From the IMG/VR virus record IMGVR_UViG_3300033984_000473, positions 62,001 to 126,000 of that record: a DNA stretch of 64,000 nucleotides. One strand, written 5' to 3'. This document shows, piece after piece, positions 3,310 through 27,161 of this stretch. Within the stretch, counting starts at the first letter, position 1; each line of letters starts with the position of its first letter. The notes beneath the pieces are model-generated. The model did not search any database. It saw only the letters and a program-made list of their open reading frames with translations, and had not been told where the DNA came from. A program made the translations under genes and the position numbers.

Positions 3310-3855
3310 TTAATCTATAACTTTGTACGTTTCACCATTTAGCGTTAATTTACGAACGTTTTTAAGGTATAATTTACGCCAAGTGATTTCACGTTCCGTA
3401 CCTTGATTTGTTGCGTGATTTTCAGTAGGTAAAAAATCAACAAGTTTCTTTTTGTCGGTAATTTTACCATTTGCAACAAATTTTGTACGAGGTTTTACAT
3501 TATCATTAGGACGGTATTGTAAAACAAATTCATTTTTGTACGTTCCAATAAATTGGTTATTTTCGCCAAATTCCAATACCATTGTATTTTGCCCTTGCTT
3601 GTAGTCGCTTGTATCTTTATCTTCTTTTACCAATTGATTTTCAACGGCTAAAATGTAGTTGCTATTTAAAAGAATACCTACTTTTGACAATTTAACAACA
3701 TTTTCAAAGTTGTTTTTTATTGTTTTGTCGGTACGGCTTTTTACCAACATTTTAGGACTTGATTTTTGTAATACACTTGCAAATACATTAACGTTTGCAA
3801 CAACTTTAGTGTTTAATAAAATTTGTGCTAATTCTTTTTGTGATACTTTTTTCAT
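3310..3855 (-). CDS. hypothetical phage protein
   Basis: 181-aa ORF with own promoter and terminator hairpin (AAAATAAGCCC..GGGCTTAT). Confidence 0.75.
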   Translation of the reverse strand: MKKVSQKELAQILLNTKVVANVNVFASVLQKSSPKMLVKSRTDKTIKNNFENVVKLSKVGILLNSNYILAVENQLVKEDKDTSDYKQGQNTMVLEFGENNQFIGTYKNEFVLQYRPNDNVKPRTKFVANGKITDKKKLVDFLPTENHATNQGTEREITWRKLYLKNVRKLTLNGETYKVID

Positions 3856-4157
3856 TTTGTGTGATTTTTAATTGGTTACTTATTTTGAACACTGCAAATA
3901 ACGTGAATAGTTTTGATATACGCAAGTTTTTAAGCAATTATTTTTAATATTTTTTTAAAATTTATTGTTACTAATAGTAAAACGCTGATTATCAACACGT
4001 TATCATAAATGGTCAATAAAGCAATAGAAGCAATTACGAAATTTGTAAGATTTTTCATTTTGTGTGATTTTTAATTGGTTATTAATATGGTGCAAATGTA
4101 AAACAAACTTTTTTAATATCCTAGTGTTTTTTATTTTTTTTTTAATTATTTTTTGTT

Positions 4158-4228
4158 TATCTTTGTAGTGTACAAAATGAGATACGGGTCACGGCAAGTG
4201 AGAGAGTAGACTCCGTCACGCCTATATG
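4158..4228 (+). ncRNA. AGTAGACTCC-family element, copy 1
   Basis: TATCTTTG promoter; ACGGG-TCAC(GGCAA)GTGA-GAGAGTAGACTCC-GTCACGCCTATATG. Confidence 0.6.
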
Positions 4229-4322
4229 TTACCCAGTAAAAAATTAACATAATATTAACATTTAAAATTTGGTAGTATGGTTTAAATGTCTTATATTTGC
4301 CCTATCAATTAAAACACACATT

Positions 4323-4598
4323 ATGACACAATTTGAACAAGCACAAGAGCAAGTAAAGAATGGAGAATTGAGAACGCCTAATGTTTCGGCTGGGGCAAAG
4401 ACTGTTGACTATTTTGGTTATCAGTTATCTGTTCACAAATTCAATTTATCGTTGATGGCAAAGGGAATGTCTTTCAAGGGTATTACGTTTACACAGATTA
4501 AAAAGTATTACGGATTGAAAGGTAGAAGTGCGAAAGATTGCCTACCGCAATTCCTTGAGATTGTCGAGAAATACAAACAAGAACTAAACCCTCAATAG
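4323..4598 (+). CDS. hypothetical protein
   Basis: Promoter 4268-4299, AAAACACACA leader, ATG at 4323, terminator AAACCCTC..GAGGGTTT-T run. Confidence 0.8.
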   Translation: MTQFEQAQEQVKNGELRTPNVSAGAKTVDYFGYQLSVHKFNLSLMAKGMSFKGITFTQIKKYYGLKGRSAKDCLPQFLEIVEKYKQELNPQ

Positions 4599-4619
4599 AG
4601 GGTTTTTTTTATGGGTCTA

Positions 4620-4635
4620 TGTACACAAATGTGTA
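4620..4635. repeat. TGTACACAAWTGTGTA palindrome, copy 1 of 6
   Basis: Other copies at 14575, 14734, 27858, 28264, 55749. Confidence 0.7.
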
Positions 4636-4693
4636 GGACGGAGTCTACTCTTTCACTTGACGTGACCCGTTGCTCTTTCAACACTACAAATAT
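4621..4693 (-). ncRNA. AGTAGACTCC-family element, copy 2
   Basis: Core at 4640-4650 on the minus strand behind a TATATTTG promoter. Confidence 0.6.
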
Positions 4694-4740
4694 AGAAAAT
4701 AAAATCCACACTACCTAATATAATGTGGATTTTTTTCAAT

Positions 4741-4920
4741 TTATTTTAGGCTTGTATCGAATAAGCATTTAAACCGATACCACATAGTTGTAAACCTAAC
4801 TATGTTAAGGTTTTTGGTTGCAAAGGTTTTGATGTTTCTTTGGTATCTTAAAATGTCATAATAGCAAGGTATGATTGTAACGCTACCAATAGTAAGTCCG
4901 AATAGTTTCCAATTGTTCAT
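4741..4920 (-). CDS. small hypothetical protein (59 aa, absent from ORF track)
   Basis: MNNWKLFGLTIG...; translated by hand. Confidence 0.5.
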   Translation of the reverse strand: MNNWKLFGLTIGSVTIIPCYYDILRYQRNIKTFATKNLNIVRFTTMWYRFKCLFDTSLK

Positions 4921-4925
4921 ATTTT

Positions 4926-5072
4926 CTATCTTTTTTTACGTTCTAATTTACGTCTTTCACGTCTCAATTCTTTACCACTTTTTGGTATTTCTAATTTGTC
5001 TGGGTGTTGAGCGGGATTAGTAATGTTATATGTTGGATAATTTTCAAATGGGCTTTTACCTTCATTTCTCAT
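4926..5072 (-). CDS. small basic protein (48 aa, absent from ORF track)
   Basis: MRNEGKSPF...ELRRERRKLERKKR; own promoter. Confidence 0.6.
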   Translation of the reverse strand: MRNEGKSPFENYPTYNITNPAQHPDKLEIPKSGKELRRERRKLERKKR

Positions 5073-5145
5073 AGTGTATGTCTTTTAATTAAAAAACAAA
5101 GATAAGGATAAGTTTTCACTTATCCAAATCTTTTTGTATTTATTT

Positions 5146-5595
5146 TTAAACTTTTTTGAATATCAAAAGTCTTGCACTATCAAATACGTTTGAACATTTA
5201 CCGCATGAACTTGCTTTTTTTGGCGTTTTGAATTTTCTATGAACGTGTGAACATTTAGGACAAACCGCTTCAAGTGTACCCTTAACAATGATTGTGTTAT
5301 TTTCGGTATAACAACGATTTCCATCACAACCGATTGACAATGCTTTACGTTTCCACGTGCTATCGTGTCCGTGTCCGTGTCCAACCAATGCGTGAGCAAT
5401 TTCGTGTAGTATTGTATTTTTTACTCTTGCTTCGTCATTCAATAGTATCAAATGTTTTGATAAGCTGATACGTCTGTAAGTGTAGTTGCAACAGCCAAAT
5501 CTACGCTTTGCGTTATCTAAATTAAACATCCAATTATCAAGTCCGTGTTCTTTCATTAATTTTTCCCCTAATTCACTTGCTTTAACTAATTCCAT
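5146..5595 (-). CDS. SprT-like zinc metalloprotease
   Basis: HEIAHAL (HExxH), GHGHDSTWK, C-terminal CxxC pairs. Confidence 0.9.
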   Translation of the reverse strand: MELVKASELGEKLMKEHGLDNWMFNLDNAKRRFGCCNYTYRRISLSKHLILLNDEARVKNTILHEIAHALVGHGHGHDSTWKRKALSIGCDGNRCYTENNTIIVKGTLEAVCPKCSHVHRKFKTPKKASSCGKCSNVFDSARLLIFKKV

Positions 5596-5689
5596 AATTT
5601 GTGTTTTTAATTGGTTACTTATTCAACACTACAAATATAATGATAATAATCCACACTACCAAATATAATGTGGATTATTTTCAATTATT

Positions 5690-5953
5690 TTATAAATTAT
5701 CTGCAAGTTCACAAAGTTGATGTGGTGTGAGTACGCTATAACAATAGGAATAGCCTTGATTATCGAGTATTGAATCGTTTACCAATTCATCGAGCCATCT
5801 ACTACCAACGAGGTTAAACGCTAATTCATCGGGAACTTTAATACAAGGTTGCCCCGTGTGTTTGCTTTTCTTTTTTGATTTCCTTGCTTTAAGGATAAGA
5901 CGCATTTCAATCTTATTGATAAACGTTTCGAGTTGTTGAGTTTTCGTTGTCAT
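5690..5953 (-). CDS. hypothetical protein
   Basis: ORF track; start at MTTK. Confidence 0.65.
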   Translation of the reverse strand: MTTKTQQLETFINKIEMRLILKARKSKKKSKHTGQPCIKVPDELAFNLVGSRWLDELVNDSILDNQGYSYCYSVLTPHQLCELADNL

Positions 5954-5955
5954 AA

Positions 5956-6078
5956 TTATACGCATCTATGGTTGCTCCAGTATCTACGTTGTTGTCCACA
6001 TCGTGAGGCACAACTTTGGCATAATAACCAAACAGAAAATAATACGATTGCTATTGCATAAGGTCTAAATGATTTCAT
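5956..6078 (-). CDS. small putative lipoprotein (40 aa, absent from ORF track)
   Basis: MKSFRPYAIAIVLFSVWLLCQSC...; own promoter. Confidence 0.55.
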   Translation of the reverse strand: MKSFRPYAIAIVLFSVWLLCQSCASRCGQQRRYWSNHRCV

Positions 6079-6117
6079 AATAAGTGTTTTAATTGATTAG
6101 AGTACAAATATAGTGAA

Positions 6118-6315
6118 TTAGTTTGACACTACCAAATTTTCATCTACTTTTTTTGCGTCAAGTATTAAAATAATTCCACACAAAGTGCCGAACCCTAAAA
6201 ACGTAAATAAACTACACATTAATTGGTCATTGGTTTCTGATACGAATATACCGATAAAGCCTAATATTTGACAAAAAAGTGTGATAAGAACAAAGATAAG
6301 ATTTAATTTTTTCAT
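6118..6315 (-). CDS. small membrane protein
   Basis: Two hydrophobic segments; own promoter. Confidence 0.7.
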   Translation of the reverse strand: MKKLNLIFVLITLFCQILGFIGIFVSETNDQLMCSLFTFLGFGTLCGIILILDAKKVDENLVVSN

Positions 6316-6404
6316 TGTGTTTGTTTTAATTGATTAGAGTACAAATATAGGTATTAGTTTTGACATATCCTAATTTATTTGCAATTATTTTTCGTGTGTG
6401 TTGG

Positions 6405-6485
6405 CTGCTGACGTATGTGCGTGTTGGAGTCTACTCTTTTGATATTCCCATATCAACCCGTTACTCTTTCAACACTACAAATATA
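6405..6485 (-). ncRNA. AGTAGACTCC-family element, copy 3
   Basis: Core 6426-6436; hairpin replaced by TTGATAT(GGGA)ATATCAA. Confidence 0.6.
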
Positions 6486-6526
6486 AGAAAAAGAAATGAC
6501 ACTACCAAACGATAGTGCCATTATTT

Positions 6527-6712
6527 TTAAATTAATTTCATTTCAAATCCGTAATGACAAAAGCCAGTGATATTTGAAATTTCGTCTGAAACAAAATCAT
6601 CAATGTCTTGTTCTTCTACGATGTCGCTTGGCACTTCGATTTCAAATTCAACAGGTAAGTCTACTACTTCTCCGTCTGTATCGAATTTAACATTTGTAAC
6701 GATTGCTTTCAT
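6527..6712 (-). CDS. hypothetical acidic protein
   Basis: Own promoter. Confidence 0.75.
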   Translation of the reverse strand: MKAIVTNVKFDTDGEVVDLPVEFEIEVPSDIVEEQDIDDFVSDEISNITGFCHYGFEMKLI

Positions 6713-6797
6713 AATGCTAGTATTAATTGATTAGAGTACAAATATAAGATAAAAAATCCACACTACCTAATATAATGTGGATTAATTTTAATTTATT

Positions 6798-7061
6798 TTA
6801 GTCAACTATTCCTATCAATAATTTGTCTGTGTAACGTCTACCTTTATTCAAGTCGTGTGCTATTCCGACAAGTACGCCATACAACGTATCTTTTATAGGC
6901 AAATCGGGATAGTCCATTTGTAACATTTCGATTGTGGTTTCTGCAACGTACTTGCACGTATCTTTATTTCCATAACCCCAATTCTCGCAATACCCAACCC
7001 TACGAATAAGGTCTGCATAAGATATAGGATAATAACCATTTTGAATTTTTGACTTTGCCAT
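6798..7061 (-). CDS. hypothetical protein
   Basis: Own promoter. Confidence 0.75.
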   Translation of the reverse strand: MAKSKIQNGYYPISYADLIRRVGYCENWGYGNKDTCKYVAETTIEMLQMDYPDLPIKDTLYGVLVGIAHDLNKGRRYTDKLLIGIVD

Positions 7062-7140
7062 AGTGTGTTTTGATTAGAGTACAAATATAGGTAAAAAAAA
7101 ATAACCTACCAAATATTTGATAGGTTATTTTTAATTTATT

Positions 7141-7428
7141 TTATTCTTCCCAAAACATTATCGTTCCAGCATCGTTCCATTCTGCCCACCAGCCGTGTTT
7201 TCTCAATAGCTTCATAAACTCGTTGTGAACTCCGAACTCGTATTTTGTGTAGTTTTCGGTGTAGTAACTGAATAGGTGCAACCCATCTTTTGCTTCGTCT
7301 CCGTTCTCTCCAGAACTCCAAATTCCGCCTTTAGAACCATTGAACTCCTCGGTTGTTCTCATAAACAAATTTGGATACTTTGCTTCGATTGCTTTCATCA
7401 TTGCTTTTCTTGTACTTGCCATAATCAT
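7141..7428 (-). CDS. hypothetical protein
   Basis: Own promoter. Confidence 0.8.
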   Translation of the reverse strand: MIMASTRKAMMKAIEAKYPNLFMRTTEEFNGSKGGIWSSGENGDEAKDGLHLFSYYTENYTKYEFGVHNEFMKLLRKHGWWAEWNDAGTIMFWEE

Positions 7429-7519
7429 AGTGTATTGGTGGTTGCTTCATTGCAACAGTACAAATATAGGTATAATAATCCACACTACCAAATGTAATGT
7501 GAATTATTTTCAATTATTT

Positions 7520-7702
7520 TTAAACTTTTTTTCGTAGTTTCAAATCTTTGATTACCTTTGCAACCATATCTTGCACTTCAAACTCGCTTTGATTATCAGT
7601 ATCGGTGCAATCGGGAACGTACCCCAATTCGATTAGTTTGTTGGTAATTGTGATACCAATTTCTTGTCGTTCATCTCGGTCTAACTTTCTTGTCTTAGCC
7701 AT
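7520..7702 (-). CDS. hypothetical protein
   Basis: Own promoter. Confidence 0.75.
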   Translation of the reverse strand: MAKTRKLDRDERQEIGITITNKLIELGYVPDCTDTDNQSEFEVQDMVAKVIKDLKLRKKV

Positions 7703-7777
7703 TGTGTATGTTTTAATTGATTAGAGTACAAAGATAAGGATAAGTTTTCACTTATCCAAATCTTTTACCAATTATTT

Positions 7778-7978
7778 TTAGTCTTTCTCAAAAGATTTTA
7801 CCCAAAAGATAGGTAGGTCTCCGTATTCTTGTTTGAATTGTACAACCCCTTTTTCTTGTGCGTCTTTGTCGCTGGTCGCTTGGATTGTAAGTCCATACTT
7901 TTGGTGGTCATCGCCTTGTTCTCTGCCATAGTGGTCGTTAGGGTCGATAGACATAATTGTAACGTGATAACTTTTCAT
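7778..7978 (-). CDS. hypothetical protein
   Basis: Start corrected to MKSY, downstream of the promoter. Confidence 0.75.
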   Translation of the reverse strand: MKSYHVTIMSIDPNDHYGREQGDDHQKYGLTIQATSDKDAQEKGVVQFKQEYGDLPIFWVKSFEKD

Positions 7979-8070
7979 AAGATAGTGTGTTAATTGATTA
8001 GAGTACAAATATAGAACATTCTTTTTTAATATCCTAATGAATTTCATTTTTTTTTAAACTTTTTTTACCT

Positions 8071-8135
8071 TATCTTTGTAGTGTTGAAAGGGTCACGACA
8101 AGTGAAAGAGTAGACTCCGACACGTCTATATGCGA
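8071..8135 (+). ncRNA. AGTAGACTCC-family element, copy 4
   Basis: TATCTTTG 8071-8078; core 8108-8118. Confidence 0.6.
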
Positions 8136-8221
8136 ACTGCTCCCGACAAGGCACAAAAAAAGAGGGACACAACTCCCTCTTTCCCCACGTTAATTGCTTA
8201 ACGTTTCACCAATTAAATATA

Positions 8222-8416
8222 TTATTCCATTCCGTATTTATTACATTTTTTCTTTGTCTTAAACTCAAATGTGGGTGCTAACATTCCACCCCAAAAGATA
8301 AAACAAACTACAAACCCTTTAAAAAACATTTCCCAAGTTGATGGCATACCACCAAATGCACTTGTTAATGATGCGAAAAATATAACTACTAATAATACTG
8401 ATAAATTCTTTGACAT
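8222..8416 (-). CDS. small membrane protein
   Basis: Two hydrophobic segments; start corrected. Confidence 0.7.
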   Translation of the reverse strand: MSKNLSVLLVVIFFASLTSAFGGMPSTWEMFFKGFVVCFIFWGGMLAPTFEFKTKKKCNKYGME

Positions 8417-8472
8417 AATGTTTGTGTTTTGATTAGAGTACAAATATAAGATTTTAATTTGACATATCCTAA

Positions 8473-8631
8473 TTAATATCTAAAAACTTTCGGTCTTGTT
8501 CTATTTTTTAAACCCACTTCTGAACACTTCATACATTGTTGTTTTCCATCATTGTGTTTTACAATAACAATATCAAAACCTTGATGTAATACTTCAACTT
8601 GTGTTTGAGTTCCAACGATTATAACTTTCAT
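8473..8631 (-). CDS. small hypothetical protein (52 aa, absent from ORF track)
   Basis: MKVIIVGTQTQVEV...; preceded by a structured leader. Confidence 0.55.
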   Translation of the reverse strand: MKVIIVGTQTQVEVLHQGFDIVIVKHNDGKQQCMKCSEVGLKNRTRPKVFRY

Positions 8632-8651
8632 AGTGTGTTTTTTGATTAAGT

Positions 8652-8715
8652 AATAACCGAGTGGGGATTGCTAGTCGGTTGTTAGTCCGTGCGTTCCAAC
8701 TCTACCTCGATTATT
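8652..8715 (-). promoter_or_regulatory. structured 5' leader
   Basis: AATAATCGAG/CTCGGTTATT 10-bp closing stem right after the promoter. Confidence 0.45.
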
Positions 8716-8764
8716 ACACTACAAATATAAGACTTTAATTTGATATAACCTAATTTATTTTGAA

Positions 8765-9064
8765 TTATTTTCCAATTCTTTTTCTGTGCATTGAACTTGG
8801 GTGCGTGTTGTCTGCTTTGCTTTCAAAACAATATGTAGGCATACCGCTCATTGAGTGTAAATCTGTCAATATGATTATGTACCCCTCGGTCAAACATCGT
8901 TTAAGATTTTCATTCATTTTAAACATTTTGATTTGTGGGAACTTTTTAGCAAATGCTTGTAAGTCGTCATCATTTTCAACTATGTATCTTTCAATTTCAA
9001 CTTCTCCCGATTGTGGACTTGTATAAACGCCCCATTTTAAATCTTTGTGTTTTACTACTAACAT
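8765..9064 (-). CDS. hypothetical protein
   Basis: Own promoter. Confidence 0.7.
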   Translation of the reverse strand: MLVVKHKDLKWGVYTSPQSGEVEIERYIVENDDDLQAFAKKFPQIKMFKMNENLKRCLTEGYIIILTDLHSMSGMPTYCFESKADNTHPSSMHRKRIGK

Positions 9065-9142
9065 AATCTATGTGTTTTGATTAGAGTACAAATATAGGTA
9101 AAAAAAATAAGACTACCAAATAAATGATAGTCTTATTTTAAA

Positions 9143-9385
9143 TTATTCTAAACTTGTTCCCTCAAAATCATACTCATATTGAATATGTGGATATTGTTTA
9201 TCCAAATATTTGTGTAGTCTATCTACACTTCTAAATCTTTTAACAATTTCTTTATCTTGCCACGAATCTAAAAATACATATTCTTTGATTATAGCAACAT
9301 AACCACCTTTGAATATTTTACCTTTATCGGGTATTGCCAAAACATTATCGGTCAAAACATTTTCTCTTAATATAAACTCTCTCAT
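9143..9385 (-). CDS. hypothetical protein
   Basis: Own promoter. Confidence 0.75.
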   Translation of the reverse strand: MREFILRENVLTDNVLAIPDKGKIFKGGYVAIIKEYVFLDSWQDKEIVKRFRSVDRLHKYLDKQYPHIQYEYDFEGTSLE

Positions 9386-9471
9386 TGTCTATTGTTTTAA
9401 TTGATTAGAGTACAAATATAGGTAAAAAAAATAAGACTACCAAATAAATGATAGTCTTATTTTAATTATTT

Positions 9472-10026
9472 TTATTCTGCCGCCCACCCAAAGAAAACGA
9501 ACTCGCCCGAACTTTCCGTAGTTGCTGACTTGTAGCGTATTGTTGCCACCGAACTACCACCACCTACAATACGTTTTTCTAAATGAATACGTGTAGTTTT
9601 TTTGGTTTTTTCAGTATGACTTCTTGCAATCTTAACCGCATCGCCTTTGGTTTTTTTCGCCCCTACTTCGTTGTCGTCCCAATCGGTTACAACATAAACA
9701 AGTTCCCATTTTTTTGTACCTTTGGTTACAATGTGGTCAACTTGGCTCTTAACCTTATTCTCATTGGCTTTAGGTTCTTTGGTACAAATACCCCACGCAT
9801 CGTCCCATTTTGAGCAATGATTTTCGATAGCATCATTGATAAATTCAGATAGTGATTTGCCACTTGCTTTGAATTTTTTAGTAGCATCAAAAACGCCACG
9901 TGTTGTACTAATTGTGCCATTGTAGGTATCGTTGCCGTATTCCTCAATTGCATCGCTTACTGCCTCTTTGTATGCCTCTTGCATACTAAATCCTTTTTGT
10001 CTTTGACTGAAACTTGATGCTCCCAT
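9472..10026 (-). CDS. hypothetical phage protein
   Basis: 184 aa; own promoter. Confidence 0.85.
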   Translation of the reverse strand: MGASSFSQRQKGFSMQEAYKEAVSDAIEEYGNDTYNGTISTTRGVFDATKKFKASGKSLSEFINDAIENHCSKWDDAWGICTKEPKANENKVKSQVDHIVTKGTKKWELVYVVTDWDDNEVGAKKTKGDAVKIARSHTEKTKKTTRIHLEKRIVGGGSSVATIRYKSATTESSGEFVFFGWAAE

Positions 10027-10105
10027 AATATGTGTGTGTTTTAATTAGAGTACAAATATAAGAATAAAAAATAAGACTACCAAATAAATGATAGTCTTTT
10101 TTTAA

Positions 10106-10423
10106 TTATTTTATTTCGTCTAGGATTGCTTGGCATTCCTCGTTAAACCTTTCAGAATTTCCATATAGGTAATCGTTGGTGCTGATAGAGGATAAGATAA
10201 ACTCATCGTCAATACTCATCAATTCCTTTAAATCGTCTTTCATTAATTGCTTATCTGACGTTTTACATTCACTTATCCACATAAAAAGATTGTCGATAAG
10301 AGTTTCTCGGTCTTCAATTCTATATCCTACAAGTTCCTCGTTGAATATTTCGCTAGGTATTCTATTACTATTGATATAGAAATTATCCCCTACTTCCTCG
10401 ATAACATATTTTGCTACGCTCAT
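10106..10423 (-). CDS. hypothetical acidic protein
   Basis: Start corrected to MSVAK. Confidence 0.75.
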   Translation of the reverse strand: MSVAKYVIEEVGDNFYINSNRIPSEIFNEELVGYRIEDRETLIDNLFMWISECKTSDKQLMKDDLKELMSIDDEFILSSISTNDYLYGNSERFNEECQAILDEIK

Positions 10424-10483
10424 AATGTGTGTTAATTGATTAGAGTACAAATATAGTGATAATAATTGACACTACCAAATTTT

Positions 10484-10804: not shown

Positions 10805-10904
10805 AATATGTGTGTTTTAATTGATAGTACAAATATAGGATAAAGTTTTTTAATATCCTAATAAATTTGTAGTTATTTTATTTGTTTATTAATTTTCTTT
10901 TGTC

Positions 10905-10975: not shown

Positions 10976-11000
10976 ACGTGAACCCCAAACAAAAAAAACC

Positions 11001-19050: not shown

Positions 19051-19052
19051 AA

Positions 19053-19897: not shown

Positions 19898-20043
19898 ATT
19901 TTATATGTTTTGATTAATAGATTACAAAGATAATACTTTTATTTCATATAACCTAATTTTTTAACAAAAAAAATGAGAACCTTTCGATTCTCACTTTCTC
20001 CTAGCTTCGGACACAACTCCTAGGCTAACCAATTAAAACATCT

Positions 20044-20478
20044 TTATATCATTGTAATCTGTACATAATCTGTATCTACCATTTGAGCCAGTTCGTCCAG
20101 TTGCTTCATAACAGTTTCCTGTATAAACATTGGTGTATCTTCCAGTTCAGCAAATTCTCCTAGTATAGCCTCAAACACATCGCCACTATAAATTCTCTCC
20201 CCTAAATCAAAATCGGTGTCTTCAAACATTTCACGTCCTTGTAATTCTTTGATTACTTTATCTAGCAAAGCTGTTTTTGGTATCTGTGTAATAGTAGCTT
20301 TGGTTAAGTACCTAGATAATTCCACCAGTTCAATCTTACCACCAAACGTATTAGCTTTCTTCAATGCCTCGCCTCTAGTATAGATTGATTCGCTACTTTC
20401 GTTTCCTAGGTATCCTGTAGTTGTTACCTGGTCGGGTCTAGCGTTATGCCCCTCTTTTAATTTTACTTTGTAATTCAT
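20044..20478 (-). CDS. hypothetical protein
   Basis: Own promoter. Confidence 0.75.
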   Translation of the reverse strand: MNYKVKLKEGHNARPDQVTTTGYLGNESSESIYTRGEALKKANTFGGKIELVELSRYLTKATITQIPKTALLDKVIKELQGREMFEDTDFDLGERIYSGDVFEAILGEFAELEDTPMFIQETVMKQLDELAQMVDTDYVQITMI

Positions 20479-20552
20479 GGCTAATGGTTTTTAATTAGAG
20501 TACAAAGATAAGGATTATATTTCTATAATCCAAATCTTTTTTGAATTATTTT

Positions 20553-20759
20553 TTAGTCAACATCAACTTCTAACCTGTAGCCCTCGATTTCAAAAAAATC
20601 GCTGTCACCGTCTTCTACAATAACATTTCCGTTATCCAGTATATCGGCAATTGTACCTTGAAACTCGTGGTTATGAATGTCATCAGCTATTGGGTCTGGC
20701 ACGGTTACAACTTGCATCACTTCTAACTTAACTCCGTTTTTATCTACAAATGGATACAT
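20553..20759 (-). CDS. hypothetical protein
   Basis: Own promoter. Confidence 0.75.
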   Translation of the reverse strand: MYPFVDKNGVKLEVMQVVTVPDPIADDIHNHEFQGTIADILDNGNVIVEDGDSDFFEIEGYRLEVDVD

Positions 20760-20821
20760 AATATTTTTCTTTATTGATTAGAGAACAAAGGTATGGATTA
20801 ATATCCAGGTAACCTAATTTT

Positions 20822-21013
20822 TTAACATCTTTTTTTATAATCTCTTACTACGTTGGAATACTTCTCCAGTAAATCTTCATAAAGCCCTAGATTCACAAGC
20901 TTCAACTTATTCAAATGCAAACCTACGTTAGCATCCTTGGGGCTTTTGTTTCCCATCCTAATTGCACGGATTCCATTCTCAATGTGCCGTACATATAATT
21001 CCTCGCAACTCAT
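20822..21013 (-). CDS. hypothetical protein
   Basis: Coupled to upstream ORF. Confidence 0.7.
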   Translation of the reverse strand: MSCEELYVRHIENGIRAIRMGNKSPKDANVGLHLNKLKLVNLGLYEDLLEKYSNVVRDYKKRC

Positions 21014-21300
21014 TATTCAGCACACAAGCTCCACGCTTCCAGTTTTTTCATTGAGTGTCCAGTAATTTTCAACTGTTCACAAATATACTTGGCTAGTCGT
21101 TTGTTGCCTCTAGTACCCTCATCAATGATTCCTGTACCAATTTTTTTGACAATATAGCTTGGGTCAGCTCCTAGAACCCTTGTACAAAATTTAACATCTT
21201 GTCCTAGATAAAAAGATTTTGTTACCTTTGGTGTAGTTAACACTAACGTCCAGTTATGGTCAAAGCCGTATGAACTTCCTATTTTAATTTCTGCTGTCAT
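21013..21300 (-). CDS. hypothetical phage protein
   Basis: Own promoter. Confidence 0.75.
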   Translation of the reverse strand: MTAEIKIGSSYGFDHNWTLVLTTPKVTKSFYLGQDVKFCTRVLGADPSYIVKKIGTGIIDEGTRGNKRLAKYICEQLKITGHSMKKLEAWSLCAE

Positions 21301-21358
21301 CCTGTATGTGTTTTTAATTAGAGTACAAAGATAATAAATAAAATTGAATTACCCTAAT

Positions 21359-21544
21359 TTATTTTAAAATTAATGAATAAAATTCTCCCTCAATCCACTC
21401 ATTCCAACCCTCTTCCCAATCCGTTTCATCATAGTCAGTCCAACCACCACTTCTATCTCTATTTATTTCGTTTAAAATATCCGCTAGTGTCCATTCTTGA
21501 ATTTCGTTTGTTTCAAGTACCTTTATCTTATATGTTTCTACCAT
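21359..21544 (-). CDS. hypothetical acidic protein
   Basis: ORF track. Confidence 0.75.
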   Translation of the reverse strand: MVETYKIKVLETNEIQEWTLADILNEINRDRSGGWTDYDETDWEEGWNEWIEGEFYSLILK

Positions 21545-21560
21545 AGTGTTTTTAAATATT

Positions 21561-21851
21561 TTATTGGAATTCGTAACCTACTTCGGTAATGTGAATTGTA
21601 TTTCCGTAATAATCGGGTTTACGCAACTTCAAATAATAAACATCAATATCACAAAAAATATCTTTCTTCTCCAAACAACACATAAGATTGTAATCACTTG
21701 TATCACATTCATCTTTACCGTCAGTAACATCTTCGATAACCATTGGTGCATCTAACTTAAATTCTCCCTGTAAGTATTCAGCAAGTGTATCAATTGAAAA
21801 TCTACAACCAACCAATTCTTCTAAAATCTTAATTACTTTTTTCTGTTTCAT
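21561..21851 (-). CDS. hypothetical protein
   Basis: Start corrected to MKQK. Confidence 0.75.
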   Translation of the reverse strand: MKQKKVIKILEELVGCRFSIDTLAEYLQGEFKLDAPMVIEDVTDGKDECDTSDYNLMCCLEKKDIFCDIDVYYLKLRKPDYYGNTIHITEVGYEFQ

Positions 21852-21919
21852 GATATACTGTGTTTTAATTAGAGTACAAAGATAAGGATATGTTTTCACA
21901 TATCCAAATCTTTTTTGAT

Positions 21920-22294
21920 TTATTTTACAAATAGTTTATTCCCTATACTGTATATAAACCCAAACTTGTAACCGTCAGCGTTCACGCCATTGAATACCCA
22001 GTTCGGACATACTCTTGGATTATACGTTACAGCCTCGCCACCTAATCCGTATATCATATCTCGACAACGAATTTCCTCACATAGTATCCACGCACACACA
22101 ACTTTCTCGCCACCCTCAAAAATCTTTTGAGCTGTCTTCTTGCCACTACGCAACTCACAATCAATGAAGTGCATTTGACAAACATCTGGGTGTACATACT
22201 GTACAACGCCATTCGGGTACTGTATTTTCCAGTGCATGAAATGTTTTCCAGCCCCTAAATGAAATCTTACCTTAAACCGTCTAACTCTTGCCAT
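21920..22294 (-). CDS. hypothetical phage protein
   Basis: Own promoter. Confidence 0.75.
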   Translation of the reverse strand: MARVRRFKVRFHLGAGKHFMHWKIQYPNGVVQYVHPDVCQMHFIDCELRSGKKTAQKIFEGGEKVVCAWILCEEIRCRDMIYGLGGEAVTYNPRVCPNWVFNGVNADGYKFGFIYSIGNKLFVK

Positions 22295-22368
22295 AATTAC
22301 TGTGTTTTAATTAGAGTACAAATATAGAAATAAAAAATGACATTACCAAATGATAATGCCATTATTTT

Positions 22369-22602
22369 TTATAATCTTACTAATTCGTATTCATCACTCA
22401 CATTGTCGCCATATCCATTACCACTTAACCAGTCGAAAATTTCCTCTTGGCTATCAGTAAAATTCTCCAACGTCAAAGTAGTAATTCGTTTGGGTTCATT
22501 GTCGGTTATTTGATATACTGTAACATCTTTGTAACCTGTACACTCTTGGACATCATCAATATCCTGTACTTCTTTCTCGATAACATAATACAATTTTTTC
22601 AT
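22369..22602 (-). CDS. hypothetical protein
   Basis: ORF track. Confidence 0.75.
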   Translation of the reverse strand: MKKLYYVIEKEVQDIDDVQECTGYKDVTVYQITDNEPKRITTLTLENFTDSQEEIFDWLSGNGYGDNVSDEYELVRL

Positions 22603-22604
22603 AA

Positions 22605-22931
22605 CTATTCTAAATTGGTTTCCATTAATTCACAAATCGTAATACGGTCTTGAATACTTCCCAAATCAGATAACTTCAATAGGTGTCTTACAAAGCTACC
22701 GTCAGCCTCAACTACCAGTATTCCGTCCTGTGTTACTTTTAGTGGGTGTACATCAAATACGCCCCCTGTAATATCGTTTCTTACCTCTAGGTAATCATCG
22801 GGTGTATCGTTTTCCAAATCCACTTCATCAAAGATAGTGATTTCGGATTGCTTGGTTAATAATTCAGAAAAGTAGTTCGCAACTTCACTTTCTAAATTGT
22901 CTAAATCATTGTTGAAATTTTTGCTTGACAT
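22605..22931 (-). CDS. hypothetical acidic protein
   Basis: Own promoter. Confidence 0.75.
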   Translation of the reverse strand: MSSKNFNNDLDNLESEVANYFSELLTKQSEITIFDEVDLENDTPDDYLEVRNDITGGVFDVHPLKVTQDGILVVEADGSFVRHLLKLSDLGSIQDRITICELMETNLE

Positions 22932-22992
22932 AATATATGTTTTTAATTAGAGTACAAATATAAGAATAAAAATCCACACTACCAAATATTTT

Positions 22993-23220
22993 TTAAAGTA
23001 TTTCTAAAAATACTCGTTCAATTTGAGTAACTCGGTTTTCATTGTTCCAGTCAACAAATTCGTCAACATCGCAATTGTCTAAATCATGTTCTTCTAATAC
23101 ATGAAATTCATTCCAACTTTCTTTCACTTCCTCATCAAAGTTAGCAACCTCGCCAACATTGGTTACTTTAACAATACCTAAGTCTTCCCCACTATCGCTG
23201 TCTGTTAATTGATAATACAT
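22993..23220 (-). CDS. hypothetical acidic protein
   Basis: Own promoter. Confidence 0.75.
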   Translation of the reverse strand: MYYQLTDSDSGEDLGIVKVTNVGEVANFDEEVKESWNEFHVLEEHDLDNCDVDEFVDWNNENRVTQIERVFLEIL

Positions 23221-23305
23221 AATATATGTTTTAATTGATTAGAGTACAAATATAAGAATAAAAATCCACACTACCAAAAATAATGTGGATTATTTTCAAT
23301 TATTT

Positions 23306-23644
23306 TTAATAAGCCCCAATACTCCCATAAGATATTGGGTAACCTTTGTTGCCCCACATAACATTTCCGTCAACGTACTCCTGTTTTATATCAGTCAATA
23401 CCGTATCTAAATAATATTCGTAAGCAATTCTTAAACTATCAGCTTTGGTAGTCTGTGGTGGATAAAATGCAAATAGGTTTTCTCTAGGGTGTCCTACAAA
23501 TAGAATGTAGATTTTATTACGCCCACGTCCGTATTCGTGTGCGTTTACTCGGTTCTTAAAGCCTGTGAATGACAAAGGCTTTCCGTTCATAATAAGCCCC
23601 AACCACGTTAATCTTTCGTTAACTTCTTCTAATGGTAAATTCAT
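23306..23644 (-). CDS. hypothetical protein
   Basis: ORF track. Confidence 0.75.
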   Translation of the reverse strand: MNLPLEEVNERLTWLGLIMNGKPLSFTGFKNRVNAHEYGRGRNKIYILFVGHPRENLFAFYPPQTTKADSLRIAYEYYLDTVLTDIKQEYVDGNVMWGNKGYPISYGSIGAY

Positions 23645-23646
23645 AA

Positions 23647-23907
23647 TTATTGGATTTCAAGGTTATTCCAAATCATATCCCCATTGTCGTCAAGGATTTC
23701 CATTGTGGTTTGATAATCGTTTTCTTCGATTGTGATAAACTCTACGGTGTCTTCCAAAAGAGTAGCCCCAATACCTAAATAATCTGCAACGCTGTCGCTG
23801 TCAGTAAGTTCGCCACTTTGTAACTTTGCTTTTACGTCTTCCATTTGTTCCACGCTATCAAATTCGATACGTTCCCAAACTGTAACTTTTACATCTAAAC
23901 TTGCCAT
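23647..23907 (-). CDS. hypothetical acidic protein
   Basis: Own promoter. Confidence 0.75.
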   Translation of the reverse strand: MASLDVKVTVWERIEFDSVEQMEDVKAKLQSGELTDSDSVADYLGIGATLLEDTVEFITIEENDYQTTMEILDDNGDMIWNNLEIQ

Positions 23908-23976
23908 AATTTCTTTGTGTTTTAATTAGAGTACAAATATAGGTAATTAAAATGTAACTACCAAATTTTTATTGGA

Positions 23977-24303
23977 TTATTTCCACAAACAACATTCCTG
24001 TAAAAAATCGTATTGTTTATCAGTCAATTCTCCAACCGTGTCAAACTCAAACTTTTCGTTGAAATAGTTTTCGTCCTCAAGTTCAACCTTGGTAGTTACC
24101 GTAATATCCAATATAGCACCTATAAGACTTTCATAGCCCATACCACTATCAATACTGCCGTCCTTTAAAGCAACATTTGCTTTTTCTAACAATTCCTCTT
24201 TGGTATCAGCCGTGAACTCAATCGTTGGATACGAACCTGTACCACCGCCCCAATAATTCCCCAATACAAAACCTGTGGCTTTGAATGATTTTTTCTTTTC
24301 CAT
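23977..24303 (-). CDS. hypothetical protein
   Basis: Own promoter. Confidence 0.75.
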   Translation of the reverse strand: MEKKKSFKATGFVLGNYWGGGTGSYPTIEFTADTKEELLEKANVALKDGSIDSGMGYESLIGAILDITVTTKVELEDENYFNEKFEFDTVGELTDKQYDFLQECCLWK

Positions 24304-24425
24304 AATGATATACTTTTTATTTCTTGTACAAATATAAGACTATTATTCTAATCCACCTAACAAAATGTGAATTATTTTTTATTTATTTTTCTGCTGTTTT
24401 ATTTGGTAGTGTCAAAACTATTCCC

Positions 24426-24500
24426 TATCTTTGTAGTGTTGAAAACAACGGGCGAACCCTAGCAAGGTGGAAGAGTAGACTCCGTCCTACCTTATACTCA
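24426..24500 (+). ncRNA. AGTAGACTCC-family element, copy 7
   Basis: Core 24473-24483. Confidence 0.6.
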
Positions 24501-24557
24501 AATAAAAAAATTTCAAAAAAAAATGCCCTACCATTTCTGATAGGGCTAATTTTTATT

Positions 24558-24917
24558 TTAGCATTCGGCTTCAAACTCGCATTGTCCGTTTTCTTTTAGA
24601 TAATCTCGAATTTGTCGCCCAAGCCCCAAGTCAGCATAATCGCTTAATTCAGCTTTTGAAATTCCAGCTTCCTCTAATTGCTTGTCATTGTAGCCGTTTT
24701 TCTCTTTAAAGAAATTGTCAATAATTCCTAACTTGTCGCCTAGGCTTTCCTCAATGTTTTTGATTTCTTCCTCAACTCCTTCCAAATCTTCCTCTTGAAA
24801 ATTGTAGTTAAGAGTTTCGGGTTGAAACCCTGTTACTCCAAACCTGTCAGCCGCACTGCTACTTTGAACAGCAAACCAAAATTTTCCCTCGATGTCGCCA
24901 CTGTAATACCTACCCAT
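24558..24917 (-). CDS. hypothetical phage protein
   Basis: MGRYYSGDIEGKFWFAVQSS; own promoter. Confidence 0.8.
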   Translation of the reverse strand: MGRYYSGDIEGKFWFAVQSSSAADRFGVTGFQPETLNYNFQEEDLEGVEEEIKNIEESLGDKLGIIDNFFKEKNGYNDKQLEEAGISKAELSDYADLGLGRQIRDYLKENGQCEFEAEC

Positions 24918-25014
24918 AATTTCTAATTTTTAATGTGATTATTAATTTCTTTAGCAAAGATAGAAAAAATAATCCATACTACCAAATGTAATATGGATTA
25001 TTTTCAAATTATTT

Positions 25015-25896
25015 TTAAACCATTTCCAATACGCCACTTTTTCTAGCAACGAACTCCAAAGATTTTTGGTTCATTTTGTAACCACTACCCAACATAATCG
25101 TTTCCAGTTTACCGTTTTCACGTTTCGGTGCAGATAATTCGTGTGTAGTGAATTTCGTAATACCACTATGCAAACCCCAAAGGTTAAGCCCTTTGTCATT
25201 AAATTCGCCCTCAATACAGTTGTACAACGTTTCCATTTTGTTAATGCTACGTGTACTCTTTTCCGACAATTCCTTTATACTTGTCAATTCCTTGTCAAAC
25301 CCTAACAAATACTTAACCATTTCGTCAGCCAATTCTCTAGTACAATCCCTGTCAGCCAGTACGTTATATAGCTCAATTTGTTTAAGGCTACGGTTCAATG
25401 CAGTTTCAATCAAAAATGGAATTTCTTTGATACGGTGTTCAATACTAGCCGAGTGTCTAAATTTCGCTTCGCCTTGCTTATAGAACTTGAAAAACTGATT
25501 AGAACAGCTCATAGTAAAATCCCCAATACCAATAGACAATGAAGTACTACCGTCATTACTATCCAGTACTGTAATGAATTTTTTAATCCTGTCATGCCCT
25601 ACAACGCCATCGCCAGTAATACCTAACTGTAAAAATACCTTGCGACCCTCATTCATAGAACCAGCTTTGGTTACAATCAAATCGTTACCAAACGGTCTAA
25701 TGCCTTGAAGCACCATATCAACGATTTCGTGGTTCTGTGATACTGTATAACCGTCCTTAACAGTATTGATACACTTGCCTAACTTGTCATTGAATAAACC
25801 AAAGTAACCACTAGGATTAAGGTTAGAATCAAATAACGGTCTTTTGCTAATGTTGAAGTCTAAACCGTTCGCTACTAAAATGTCTTGTGTGTTCAT
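25015..25896 (-). CDS. DUF932 (DUF945/TIGR03299-like) protein
   Basis: YTVSQN, AGSMNEGRKVFLQL, DSNDGSTS, CSNQF, HSASI, NLWGL pattern typical of the family. Confidence 0.85.
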   Translation of the reverse strand: MNTQDILVANGLDFNISKRPLFDSNLNPSGYFGLFNDKLGKCINTVKDGYTVSQNHEIVDMVLQGIRPFGNDLIVTKAGSMNEGRKVFLQLGITGDGVVGHDRIKKFITVLDSNDGSTSLSIGIGDFTMSCSNQFFKFYKQGEAKFRHSASIEHRIKEIPFLIETALNRSLKQIELYNVLADRDCTRELADEMVKYLLGFDKELTSIKELSEKSTRSINKMETLYNCIEGEFNDKGLNLWGLHSGITKFTTHELSAPKRENGKLETIMLGSGYKMNQKSLEFVARKSGVLEMV

Positions 25897-26034
25897 ATCT
25901 AAAATTGTTTAATTGATTAGAGTGCAAATATACAACCTTTATTTCATTCCACCAAATAAAAATGCAATTATTTTTAATTTATTTTTTTATGTAAAATAAT
26001 CTATAAAAAATTAGGATATGTAAAAAACATTCCC

Positions 26035-26110
26035 TACCTTTGTACTGTAATTAAATTACGGGTCGCATAGGATGTGAAAGAGTAGACTCCACCGTACCTT
26101 ATACTCAAAT
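26035..26110 (+). ncRNA. AGTAGACTCC-family element, copy 8
   Basis: Core 26080-26090; hairpin TCGCAT(AGG)ATGTGA. Confidence 0.6.
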
Positions 26111-26204
26111 AGCCAAATAGCCAAATACAAAAAACAAAAATGCAAAATAAACCTATAACTTAATATAAGCCTATTTCGCATTTTAAGGTACTTTTAAAGG
26201 ACGT

Positions 26205-27023
26205 TTATACCAATTCCAATTCCTTGGTAGGAACGCTATCATAAATAGCGTTAACCTTATCAAAAATAGCTTGGCTATCTTTGGCTGTTTCAATTACAAA
26301 ACCACTTGTAAAAGCAATTTTATTATCAGCACCTTTGCCTGTCATTTTTTTGTATTTTAAACCACAAATAACATTCTGTTTATCCAAAAATCGTAGGTCG
26401 TCATTATCAGCATTGATAACCTCAAAACCGTTATAAGTAGTAGGTAATTTGTCAAATACCATTGCTACATTAAAACCACGTTTCAATAATTCTAATGATT
26501 TAATATCATTCGTTTCAGAACGTGAAAAAGTCAAATGATAATTACTAGGTAACACTTTGTCAAAACGAAAATGATTTTTTGTATAATCATAAAATTGTAC
26601 ATTCGGGTACATTTCAAAAATGTTTTTAGTATTATTGTCAAATACTTTGTATTTTTCAAATGGCAAATCACTTGTACCATTTAAACGTATAGTAACAATA
26701 GCTTTGTCAGTATGTTTTTTTACCGCTTTGCCAATTTCCACATATAATTGGTTCATAAATTCAATACGACTACTTAAAAAGTATTCAGTTTTGGCAACCC
26801 TACCTTGCATAACATTACTATACATACCGCCAAAACCACTACCAACAAGGCAACTATCAGCACAACCTTTACTTGCATGGCTACATACATTGATACCTTT
26901 GCTATTGGCTGTAAAAGGCGACATATACATTATATAGGTCATATAACCTAATTTTTCTCCTTTTACTGTTTTCGCATTATTAGTACTTAATAATGGTTTT
27001 CTTTTTACTACTTCTACATTCAT
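26205..27023 (-). CDS. GP88-like phage protein
   Basis: NVCSHASKGCADSCL Cys cluster, IRLNGTSD, FYDYTK, YHLTFS, DLRFLD. Confidence 0.8.
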   Translation of the reverse strand: MNVEVVKRKPLLSTNNAKTVKGEKLGYMTYIMYMSPFTANSKGINVCSHASKGCADSCLVGSGFGGMYSNVMQGRVAKTEYFLSSRIEFMNQLYVEIGKAVKKHTDKAIVTIRLNGTSDLPFEKYKVFDNNTKNIFEMYPNVQFYDYTKNHFRFDKVLPSNYHLTFSRSETNDIKSLELLKRGFNVAMVFDKLPTTYNGFEVINADNDDLRFLDKQNVICGLKYKKMTGKGADNKIAFTSGFVIETAKDSQAIFDKVNAIYDSVPTKELELV

Positions 27024-27161
27024 AACTAATTTGTTTTAATTGATTAGAGTGCAAATATACAACTATTATTTTAATATACAAGTTTTTTTGTAATTATTTT
27101 TAATATTTTTTTTATGTGTAAAATAATTCACTTTTTATTTGGTAGTGTCATTTATTATCAC

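What the first reader, a model, noticed from the sequence alone, without database searches (positions are those of the whole stretch)
3850..27070. 23-kb array of single-gene cassettes separated by fused terminator/promoter hairpins with covarying stems
Seen: about 50 near-identical promoter/leader units. In many, the -33 TTTG (taccaaa on +) sits within an inverted repeat whose arms differ between copies but stay paired: AAAATCCACA..TGTGGATTTT (4701-4734), AAAAATAACCTA..TAGGTTATTTTT (~7096-7132), AAAATAAGACTA..TAGTCTTATTTT (~9103-9139), AATGACATTA..TAATGCCATT (~22336-22363). On the coding strand the stem is followed by a T run, so it can terminate the upstream gene while overlapping the next promoter. 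Established: comparable promoter/stem-loop repeats (PeSL) occur in hypervariable regions of T4-like phages. Inference: modular cassettes that can be shuffled by recombination between the repeats, an integron-like anti-host gene library without an integrase.
Basis: partly seen in the sequence, partly recalled or inferred. Interest (0 to 1): 0.7.

Follow-up and report, generated by a model that had tools for sequence, protein, structure and literature searches.

The report
Promoter-terminator gene cassettes in lake phage
A 23-kb stretch of a large freshwater phage holds about 55 small genes, most with their own copy of one promoter and leader and many with a terminator hairpin built into that promoter; this is the counterpart, for a Bacteroidota-type host, of the PeSL cassettes known from T4-type phages.

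Summary
Window 3.9-27.1 kb holds 50 minus-strand promoters of one design: -33 TTTG, a 20-nt spacer, the -7 box TAnnTTTG, and a conserved G-poor leader with no Shine-Dalgarno sequence. They serve about 55 unrelated small genes.

About 21 units carry a hairpin whose 3' arm and T run form the promoter spacer. The arms come in about 10 sequence types that fit only their own partner. There are three compensatory double changes. The fold is stronger as sense-strand RNA, which suggests intrinsic terminators.

The grammar is that of Bacteroidota. The genome is a 233-kb lake-metagenome phage with a T4-type head and packaging module.

Relatives carry the same architecture with their own leader variants. 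Shared cassettes are few and often reordered. In one near-identical variant both crossovers lie between the -7 box and the ATG, as in RB49/phi1 PeSL mini-circles.

The closest known kind is the PeSL, so I call this a new variant. The integron analogy fails: there is no integrase, no attC, and every cassette has its own promoter. Anti-host function is untested.

Side findings: a phage-restricted, multi-copy small RNA family inside the array, and a sharp split of -7 box types between the array and the rest of the genome.

The parts
3310..27100 (-). The whole array: about 55 small minus-strand genes, 50 minus-strand promoter/leader units, 9 embedded small-RNA genes and 2 tRNA-like genes
   Evidence: no paralogues among the 59 proteins
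4059..27082 (-). Units without a strong hairpin. Their -7 boxes start (minus strand) at 4100, 6112, 6349, 8013, 8448, 8729, 10455, 10837, 11869, 12270, 12501, 12930, 13190, 13398, 13966, 15237, 15920, 16193, 17337, 18802, 19324, 19932, 20793, 21333, 22962, 23941, 24336, 25932 and 27059
   Evidence: Units 16193 and 15558 are leaderless, with the ATG 4 nt after the box
4701..4733 (-). Hairpin spanning the -33, arms CCACA/TGTGG; this promoter drives a small RNA
   Evidence: -16.0 kcal/mol
5641..5683 (-). Hairpin CCACA/TGTGG before the SprT-like gene 5146-5595
   Evidence: -19.9 kcal/mol
6495..6522 (-). Hairpin GGCACTA/TAGTGTC; this promoter drives a small RNA
6755..6783 (-). Hairpin CCACA/TGTGG followed by a T run; gene 6527-6712
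7097..7132 (-). Hairpin AACCTA/TAGGTT, 16 pairs, then a T run; gene 6798-7061
7474..7508 (-). Hairpin TTCACA/TGTGGA with a U.G pair; gene 7141-7428
9104..9139 (-). Hairpin AAGACTA/TAGTCTT; shares a 65-nt exact run with the unit at 9420
9428..9463 (-). Second copy of the AAGACTA/TAGTCTT hairpin; gene 9143-9385
10073..10098 (-). Third AAGACTA/TAGTCTT hairpin; gene 9472-10026
11249..11292 (-). Hairpin AACCTA/TAGGTT; gene 11001-11198
   Evidence: -17.1 kcal/mol
15563..15604 (-). Palindrome that includes the TTTGG itself (ATATCCAA/TTTGGATAT); leaderless gene 15268-15546
16958..16999 (-). Hairpin CTACA/TGTAG, a compensatory double change from CCACA/TGTGG
   Evidence: alignment A1
17691..17718 (-). 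Palindrome ATATACCAA/TTGGTATAT including the -33
18253..18281 (-). Hairpin CCACA/TGTGG plus a T run; gene 17703-18212
22336..22363 (-). Hairpin GGCATTA/TAATGTC, a compensatory double change from GGCACTA/TAGTGTC
23263..23291 (-). Hairpin CCACA/TGTGG; gene 22993-23220
24965..25005 (-). Hairpin CCATA/TATGG, a compensatory double change
   Evidence: -19.8 kcal/mol
5106..5125 (-). Spacer hairpin with a GAAA loop (GGATAAGT/ACTTATCC) between the -33 and the TATCTTTG box
   Evidence: the same hairpin occurs in relatives L105 and L109
7738..7757 (-). Spacer hairpin GGATAAGT-GAAA-ACTTATCC; gene 7520-7702
20512..20531 (-). Spacer hairpin GGATTATA-GAAA-TATAATCC
21886..21905 (-). Spacer hairpin GGATATGT-GAAA-ACATATCC, covarying with the 5106 type
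4166..27256 (+). Seven plus-strand small-RNA genes with the invariant AGAGTAGACTCC: 4166-4245, 8079-8149, 10913-10990, 13474-13551, 24434-24514, 26043-26121 and 27170-27256
4609..6477 (-). Two minus-strand copies of the same small RNA: 4609-4686 and 6395-6477
14876..15149 (-). Two aberrant tRNA-like genes (15077-15149 and 14876-15003) downstream of the promoter at 15237

Best explanation
The region is the hyperplastic, probably earliest-expressed, region of a large lytic phage of a Bacteroidota-type host. Each unit is a self-contained expression module. It has a consensus host sigma-A promoter (-33 TTTG, 20-nt spacer, -7 TAnnTTTG). A leader of about 20 nt follows, nearly free of G, with A at -3 and at -11 to -14 and no Shine-Dalgarno sequence. 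Then comes one small gene, sometimes two. In about 40% of units an intrinsic terminator for the upstream gene is built into the promoter: the 5' arm lies upstream, the -33 sits in or next to the loop, and the 3' arm plus U tract is the spacer. This insulates neighbours, so genes can be gained, lost or replaced without polar effects. The 20-65-nt identical runs shared by units give homologous recombination places to cross over, which produces the mosaic of cassettes seen among relatives. Shown here: the anatomy, arm covariation, the sense-strand bias of the fold, the mosaicism, and one pair of crossovers inside units. Inferred: promoter activity and timing, termination, and that unit-by-unit recombination is the main route of change.
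For: Repeat statistics. Hairpins against shuffles and the terminator scan. Cognate against non-cognate arms: -14.9 against -6.3 kcal/mol, p < 1e-4. Three compensatory double substitutions. Sense RNA is more stable than antisense in 23 of 24 units (Wilcoxon p = 2e-5), with 32 G.U pairs in sense against 6 in antisense. The leader matches the Flavobacterium johnsoniae translation determinants: A at -3 in 37 of 46, A at -11 to -14 in 31-39 of 46, and no Shine-Dalgarno sequence in 46 (PMC6847099). The cassette proteins are unrelated to each other. Relatives have the same architecture with lineage-specific leaders. Shared cassettes are in different order and context. L115 is about 97-98% identical over a two-gene module, and both crossovers lie between a -7 box and an ATG; RB49/phi1 mini-circle crossovers lie between the -10 box and the ATG (PMC2839356). 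Of 1225 unit pairs, 204 share exact runs of 20 nt or more. The -7 box types are partitioned between the array and the rest of the genome.
Against: There are no transcript data. The RNA-run contigs break at the repeats and say nothing about starts or ends. About 60% of units lack a strong hairpin, so read-through must be common. Contigs of the same phage from four other samples are collinear. A relative of about 95% identity is collinear over the 6 kb examined. Some relatives keep significant collinearity: 10 of 12 shared genes in L199. One junction is not a unit-by-unit product: in L121 the homologues of genes 9143 and 7520 sit 5 nt apart with no unit between them. Selection for intact genes alone would push surviving breakpoints into intergenic DNA. 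No RecA/UvsX-type Pfam match was found in the record, which is an estimated 64% complete.
Confidence: 0.7

Rival explanations
1. The units are only strong promoters, translation leaders and ordinary terminators, kept alike by selection for expression. They play no special part in recombination. Differences in gene content arise from general illegitimate or homologous exchange, followed by selection for intact genes.
For: Order is stable at 99% identity or more and in a relative of about 95% identity. There is partial collinearity in L199, L249 and L108. One junction has no unit between the genes. Joints in short-read contigs have short sides and are explained by the repeats themselves.
Against: Both crossovers in L115 lie in the leader of a unit, although the flanking coding DNA is 97-98% identical. 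Homology tracts to L106 start at the -33, the -7 box or the ATG and end at stop codons. Recombination at the same position was shown experimentally for PeSLs.
Confidence: 0.25
2. The inverted repeats are DNA-level sites. They could be operators for a dimeric regulator that shuts early promoters, or folded single-strand crossover sites for a recombinase (attC-like).
For: The repeat covers the -33 element, where a bound protein would block the polymerase. The arms are followed and preceded by symmetric A and T tracts.
Against: At least 10 unrelated arm sequences are not what a single sequence-specific protein would recognise. Pairing relies on G.U pairs that are A.C mismatches on the other strand, and the sense fold is stronger in 23 of 24 units. 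There is no integrase. The arm register shifts between types.
Confidence: 0.05
3. The hairpins are RNA 3'-end stabilisers or processing sites (barriers to RNase III or exonucleases) in long read-through transcripts, not terminators.
For: The stems are AT-rich and long (12-16 pairs), unlike the short GC-rich terminators that end the small RNAs of the same region. Many units have none, so polycistronic RNA is likely.
Against: Most are followed at once by 5 or more T in 8 nt and preceded by an A tract, which is the form of intrinsic terminators.
Confidence: 0.15

Closest known systems
PeSL (promoter-early stem-loop) cassettes of T4-type phages RB49/phi1, T4/PST and KVP40/nt-1 (PMC2839356, PMC4122927)
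   Same: Intergenic composite elements in a hyperplastic region of small ORFan genes. Each has an AT-rich tract, a stem-loop that can terminate upstream transcription, a host-type strong promoter, a conserved leader and an ATG. Stem sequences differ between lineages. The elements are linked to insertions, deletions and replacements between relatives, and crossovers lie between the proximal promoter box and the ATG.
   Different: The promoter grammar is that of Bacteroidota (-33 TTTG, -7 TAnnTTTG), not sigma-70. There is no Shine-Dalgarno sequence; the leader is A-rich and G-poor. The stem-loop is not upstream of the promoter but overlaps it: the -33 is in or beside the loop, and the 3' arm and U tract are the spacer. 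A second hairpin form lies wholly in the spacer with a GAAA loop. The arms are AT-rich and of about 10 types within one genome. The phage shares only head and packaging genes with T4-type phages, at about 30% identity. Mini-circles and promoter or terminator activity were not tested.
Integron gene-cassette arrays
   Same: A long one-directional run of small, unrelated, mostly single-gene units separated by imperfect inverted repeats. Content varies between relatives.
   Different: There is no IntI integrase, no attC architecture and no attI. There is no single Pc promoter; every cassette has its own. The inverted repeat is best read as an RNA terminator.
Primary-sigma promoters and Shine-Dalgarno-less initiation regions of Bacteroidota (Flavobacterium johnsoniae; PMC6847099)
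   Same: The -7 box TAnnTTTG without G at the nn positions, the -33 TTTG, and a start about 5 nt after the box. A at -3 and at -12/-13, and no Shine-Dalgarno sequence.
   Different: The phage units are far more uniform than host promoters. They have a fixed 20-nt spacer, a clear -33 extended to TTTGGTAG, and about 20 nt of conserved transcribed leader.

Membership tests
PeSL | Lies between genes in a hyperplastic region of a T4-type phage | tested here: inconclusive
   The position between genes and the hyperplastic region are clear. T4-type large terminase, major head protein and portal are present, but only about 30% identical to named T4-like phages, and the replication module was not recognised.
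PeSL | Contains a near-consensus promoter for the host's primary sigma factor | tested here: met
   Fifty minus-strand matches to the Bacteroidota consensus, nearly all with a 20-nt spacer (consensus from PMC6847099). This is a sequence match only; activity and timing are not testable with these tools.
PeSL | Stem-loop able to terminate transcription coming from upstream | tested here: met
   Structure only: z-scores, T runs, arm covariation and sense-strand bias. It is present in about 21 of 50 units. Termination itself is not testable here.
PeSL | Stem-loop placed just upstream of the -35 element | tested here: not met
   The hairpin spans the -33 or lies inside the spacer.
PeSL | Shine-Dalgarno sequence and ATG at the 3' end | tested here: not met
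   None of 46 leaders has a Shine-Dalgarno-like sequence; an A-rich Bacteroidota-type leader stands in its place.
PeSL | Insertions, deletions and replacements between close relatives have crossovers inside the element | tested here: met
   One case at base resolution, L115 against the window. The rest is gene-level support. The sample is small.
PeSL | Forms mini-circles by recombination between neighbouring elements | not testable with these tools
   Only assembled contigs of public runs were available. They break at the repeats, and their joints have sides of 21-46 nt.
Integron | IntI tyrosine recombinase next to the array | tested here: not met
   No PF00589 match in the 233-kb record; all 14 control genomes matched. 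The record is an estimated 64% complete.
Integron | Promoterless cassettes expressed from a common Pc promoter | tested here: not met
   About 45 of about 55 genes have their own promoter.
Integron | attC sites with conserved R/L boxes | tested here: not met
   The arms have about 10 unrelated sequences. The only conserved core is the promoter's TTTGG(TAG).

The most novel reading that the evidence does not exclude
The array is an active cassette-exchange system and not a passive recombination substrate. In this reading the covarying hairpins are folded-strand crossover sites used by an unrecognised recombinase, and the phage-restricted GUAGACUCC small RNAs scattered through the array, on both strands and in every relative, are cofactors or guides of that system or a new host-takeover RNA class. 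A milder and likelier part of this reading (about 0.35) is only that the small RNA is a real, new, trans-acting phage RNA family.
Probability: 0.06. Interest if true: 0.85.

Novelty: new variant of a known kind. Interest (0 to 1): 0.5.

Why it matters
PeSLs have been described only in T4-type phages of Proteobacteria, with sigma-70 promoters and Shine-Dalgarno sites. The paper library I searched holds no paper that mentions both PeSLs and Bacteroidetes. This array shows the same design rebuilt in a quite different transcription and translation grammar, in a widespread clade of large freshwater phages. That argues the insulated-cassette architecture is a general, convergent answer to rapid turnover of accessory genes. 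The terminator inside the promoter is a compact arrangement that may be useful as a part for Bacteroidota genetics. The units also give a ready set of about 50 natural promoter/leader variants and about 10 terminator variants to test. The small RNA family and the split of -7 box types give two further testable leads on how these phages time their gene expression.

Tried and rejected
1. Near-identity DNA search of the array against named phages found no match.
2. An exact search for the unit in IMG/VR gave only single, probably chance, matches. Relatives use other leader variants.
3. Laying public-run contigs on 16-22 kb to find deletion or circle joints was not informative. Contigs end at the repeats, depth spikes at the units, and the joints have short sides. 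I count them as repeat artefacts, apart from one RNA-run contig that joins the stop of gene 19053 to the unit of gene 21561, which is only suggestive.
4. A DNA search of five relatives' records found no relative of 90% identity or more.
5. A single column-wise covariation count on alignment A1 was rejected because the arm types pair in different registers. I used a chimera test instead.
6. Pairing of the small RNA motif with the conserved leader was rejected. The match is only 6 nt, and the leader changes between lineages while the motif does not.
7. No complementary site for the small RNA motif exists elsewhere in the phage genome.
8. RNAalifold on MAFFT alignments of the small RNA gave no consensus structure and no Rfam family matched.
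9. Pfam, PHROGs and atlas searches gave no function for most cassette proteins.
10. Paralogy between cassettes was rejected.


Full report
**What the window is.**
The window is bases 62,001-126,000 of a single 232,931-bp contig. The record is a lake-water metagenome contig, JGI 3300033984. CheckV rates it 64% complete. It encodes a T4-type large terminase, major head protein and portal. The nearest named phages are only about 30% identical in the terminase. In contrast, more than 300 IMG/VR contigs encode a relative of that protein, and the 80 best are 77-100% identical. It therefore belongs to a common, uncultured clade of large freshwater phages. GC content is about 33%, and the genes of the region lie on the minus strand.

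- The core of the repeat matches 46 times in the window against 0.05 expected.
- Genome-wide, 42 of 48 matches lie in window 4.1-27.2 kb.
- Read on the minus strand, a unit runs: A-rich tract, -33 TTTG (often TTTGGTAG), a 20-nt T-rich spacer, the -7 box TAnnTTTG, a conserved leader, then ATG.
- Fifty such promoters lie on the minus strand between 4100 and 27059. The spacer is 20 nt in all but three (19 nt).
- About 45 of about 55 genes have their own promoter. About 10 are second genes of two-gene operons.
- The 59 proteins tested show no paralogy, so the repeat is confined to the regulatory DNA.

**The grammar is that of Bacteroidota.**
- The -33/-7 consensus and a start about 5 nt after the box are those described for Flavobacterium johnsoniae (PMC6847099).
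- The leaders have A at -3 in 37 of 46 and A at -11 to -14 in 31-39 of 46. They contain almost no G, and none has a Shine-Dalgarno sequence. These are the positive determinants of translation reported in that paper.
- Two cassettes are leaderless.

**The hairpins.**
- Twenty-three of 58 units fold better than shuffles, with z < -2.
- A generic terminator scan gives 34 sites against 9.4 +/- 3.0 expected. Fourteen of them are unit hairpins on the coding strand.
- There are two forms. In 17 units the arms flank the -33, and the 3' arm and T run form the promoter spacer. In 4 units a GGATAAGT-GAAA-ACTTATCC type hairpin lies wholly in the spacer.
- The arms fall into about 10 sequence types in different registers, so I did not use a column-wise count.
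- Instead I joined each 5' half to each 3' half. Own partners give -14.9 kcal/mol and foreign partners -6.3 (permutation p < 1e-4).
- Three compensatory double changes are visible in alignment A1: CCACA/TGTGG to CTACA/TGTAG, CCACA/TGTGG to CCATA/TATGG, and GGCACTA/TAGTGTC to GGCATTA/TAATGTC.
- The fold is stronger as sense RNA in 23 of 24 units (-14.0 against -9.7 kcal/mol, p = 2e-5). It uses 32 G.U pairs, against 6 in the antisense fold.
- This points to an RNA structure on the coding strand, most simply an intrinsic terminator. It argues against a DNA operator or cruciform.

**Relatives.**
- Loci around homologues of the DUF932 cassette have the same architecture, but each lineage has its own leader. 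One example is a unit repeated 27 times in L105.
- Only 3-13 of the window's cassettes have homologues in any relative's 12-20 kb locus. Over 15 of these loci, 76 of 108 shared genes lie in the longest collinear run. Order ranges from collinear (L199, 10 of 12) to random-like (L106, L225).
- L106 shares single cassettes at 75-83% DNA identity, while DUF932 is only 66% identical. The homology tracts start at a -33, a -7 box or an ATG and end at stop codons.
- The 60-aa protein of 7520-7702 occurs letter for letter in three other genomic contexts. There it is the second gene of an operon.
- Contigs of the same phage at 99% identity or more from four other samples are collinear.
- A variant in JGI 3300059473 has a 121-aa gene where the window has the 87-aa gene.

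**A base-level case.**
L115 is about 97-98% identical to the window across a two-gene module and through the next -33, spacer and -7 box. Upstream it carries a different unit, one with a hairpin, and a different neighbour. Downstream it diverges 4 nt after the -7 box into an unrelated gene. Both crossovers therefore lie between a -7 box and an ATG. RB49/phi1 PeSL mini-circle crossovers were mapped between the -10 box and the ATG (PMC2839356). Exact runs of 20 nt or more are shared by 204 of 1225 unit pairs, and the longest run is 65 nt.

**What could not be shown.**
No raw reads were served. Assembled contigs of public runs end at the repeats, so starts, ends, deletions and circles remain untested. 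No integrase and no RecA-type Pfam match were found. Cassette functions are unknown except for five with Pfam names.

**Comparison and verdict.**
The closest known kind is the PeSL (PMC2839356, PMC4122927). Shared features are the composite AT tract, stem-loop, host promoter, leader and ATG, the setting in a hyperplastic region, and the position of crossovers. The differences are the Bacteroidota promoter and leader grammar, the absence of a Shine-Dalgarno sequence, and a terminator that overlaps the promoter instead of preceding it. I file it as a new variant of a known kind, not as an integron analogue.

**Side findings.**
- Nine promoter-driven small RNAs with the invariant AGAGUAGACUCC lie in the array, on both strands.
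  - Each has two variable hairpins with covarying stems and a 3' hairpin.
  - The family recurs in every relative examined and in at least 45 promoter-preceded IMG/VR copies.
  - It is absent from Rfam and from the cellular species genomes searched, except for two contigs of one metagenome bin.
- Array promoters use TATATTTG or TATCTTTG in 44 of 46 cases, while promoters elsewhere in the genome use TACCTTTG in 44 of 50. The phage encodes a sigma-70-family factor.

Noticed in passing
window 4166-4245, 8079-8149, 10913-10990, 13474-13551, 24434-24514, 26043-26121, 27170-27256 (+); 4609-4686, 6395-6477 (-): A multi-copy small RNA family. A Bacteroidota promoter drives two variable hairpins, then the invariant AGAGUAGACUCC, which starts a 3' hairpin followed by a U run. 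There are nine copies, all inside the array. The family is present in all relatives examined and in at least 45 promoter-preceded IMG/VR copies. It has no Rfam family and no complementary site in the phage. It is absent from the cellular species genomes searched, apart from two contigs of one metagenome bin. The plus-strand copies converge on minus-strand genes and, in the window, end in GC-rich two-way terminators.
   Followed up: partly
whole genome; window 56387-57271 (-): The -7 box types are split by place. The array has TATATTTG 33 times and TATCTTTG 11 times, with TACCTTTG only twice. The rest of the genome has TACCTTTG in 44 of 50 promoters. The phage encodes a sigma-70-family factor with regions 1.2, 2 and 4, which might read one of the two classes.
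   Followed up: partly
window 15077-15149 (-) and 14876-15003 (-): Two tRNA-like genes with aberrant anticodon arms lie downstream of the array-type promoter at 15237, in a GC-richer stretch. One has a 6-nt anticodon loop, and ARAGORN could not name it. The other has a 39-nt insert and scores below the Rfam threshold.
   Followed up: partly
window 58529-59188 (-): A cluster of tRNA genes. Rfam reports three (two of them 99 nt long), while ARAGORN reports only a tRNA-Pro at 58734-58805.
   Followed up: no
window 8645-8729 (-): The promoter at 8729 is followed by a GC-richer leader of about 90 nt before the 52-aa gene 8473-8631. The first 85 nt are 84% identical to L106 5520-5604, so this may be a conserved structured leader or RNA.
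   Followed up: no
window 15546-15558 and 16181-16193 (-): Two cassettes have the ATG 4 nt after the -7 box. That places the predicted start on the A of the ATG, so these would be leaderless mRNAs.
   Followed up: no
window 7520-7702 (-); L121-L127: This 60-aa protein is identical in at least three other genomic contexts, although the DNA is only 83-89% identical. This implies strong purifying selection on a mobile cassette of unknown function.
   Followed up: partly
genome 41387-43666 (L013:1387-3666, -): A 759-aa reading frame whose two ends match thymidylate synthase. The middle 340 residues match a family named anaerobic ribonucleotide reductase. It may be an inserted domain or an intein.
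   Followed up: no
L257, L258 (CAZNER010000085.1, CAZNER010000163.1): Two contigs of a metagenome bin labelled Candidatus Saccharibacteria carry the phage small-RNA motif. They are probably phage contigs binned by mistake.
   Followed up: no
window 30720-31496 (-), 25015-25896 (-), 5146-5595 (-): An ADP-ribosylglycohydrolase gene lies just outside the array. DUF932 and SprT-like genes lie inside it. From my own knowledge, not tested here, these families often occur in plasmid leading regions and anti-restriction contexts.
   Followed up: no
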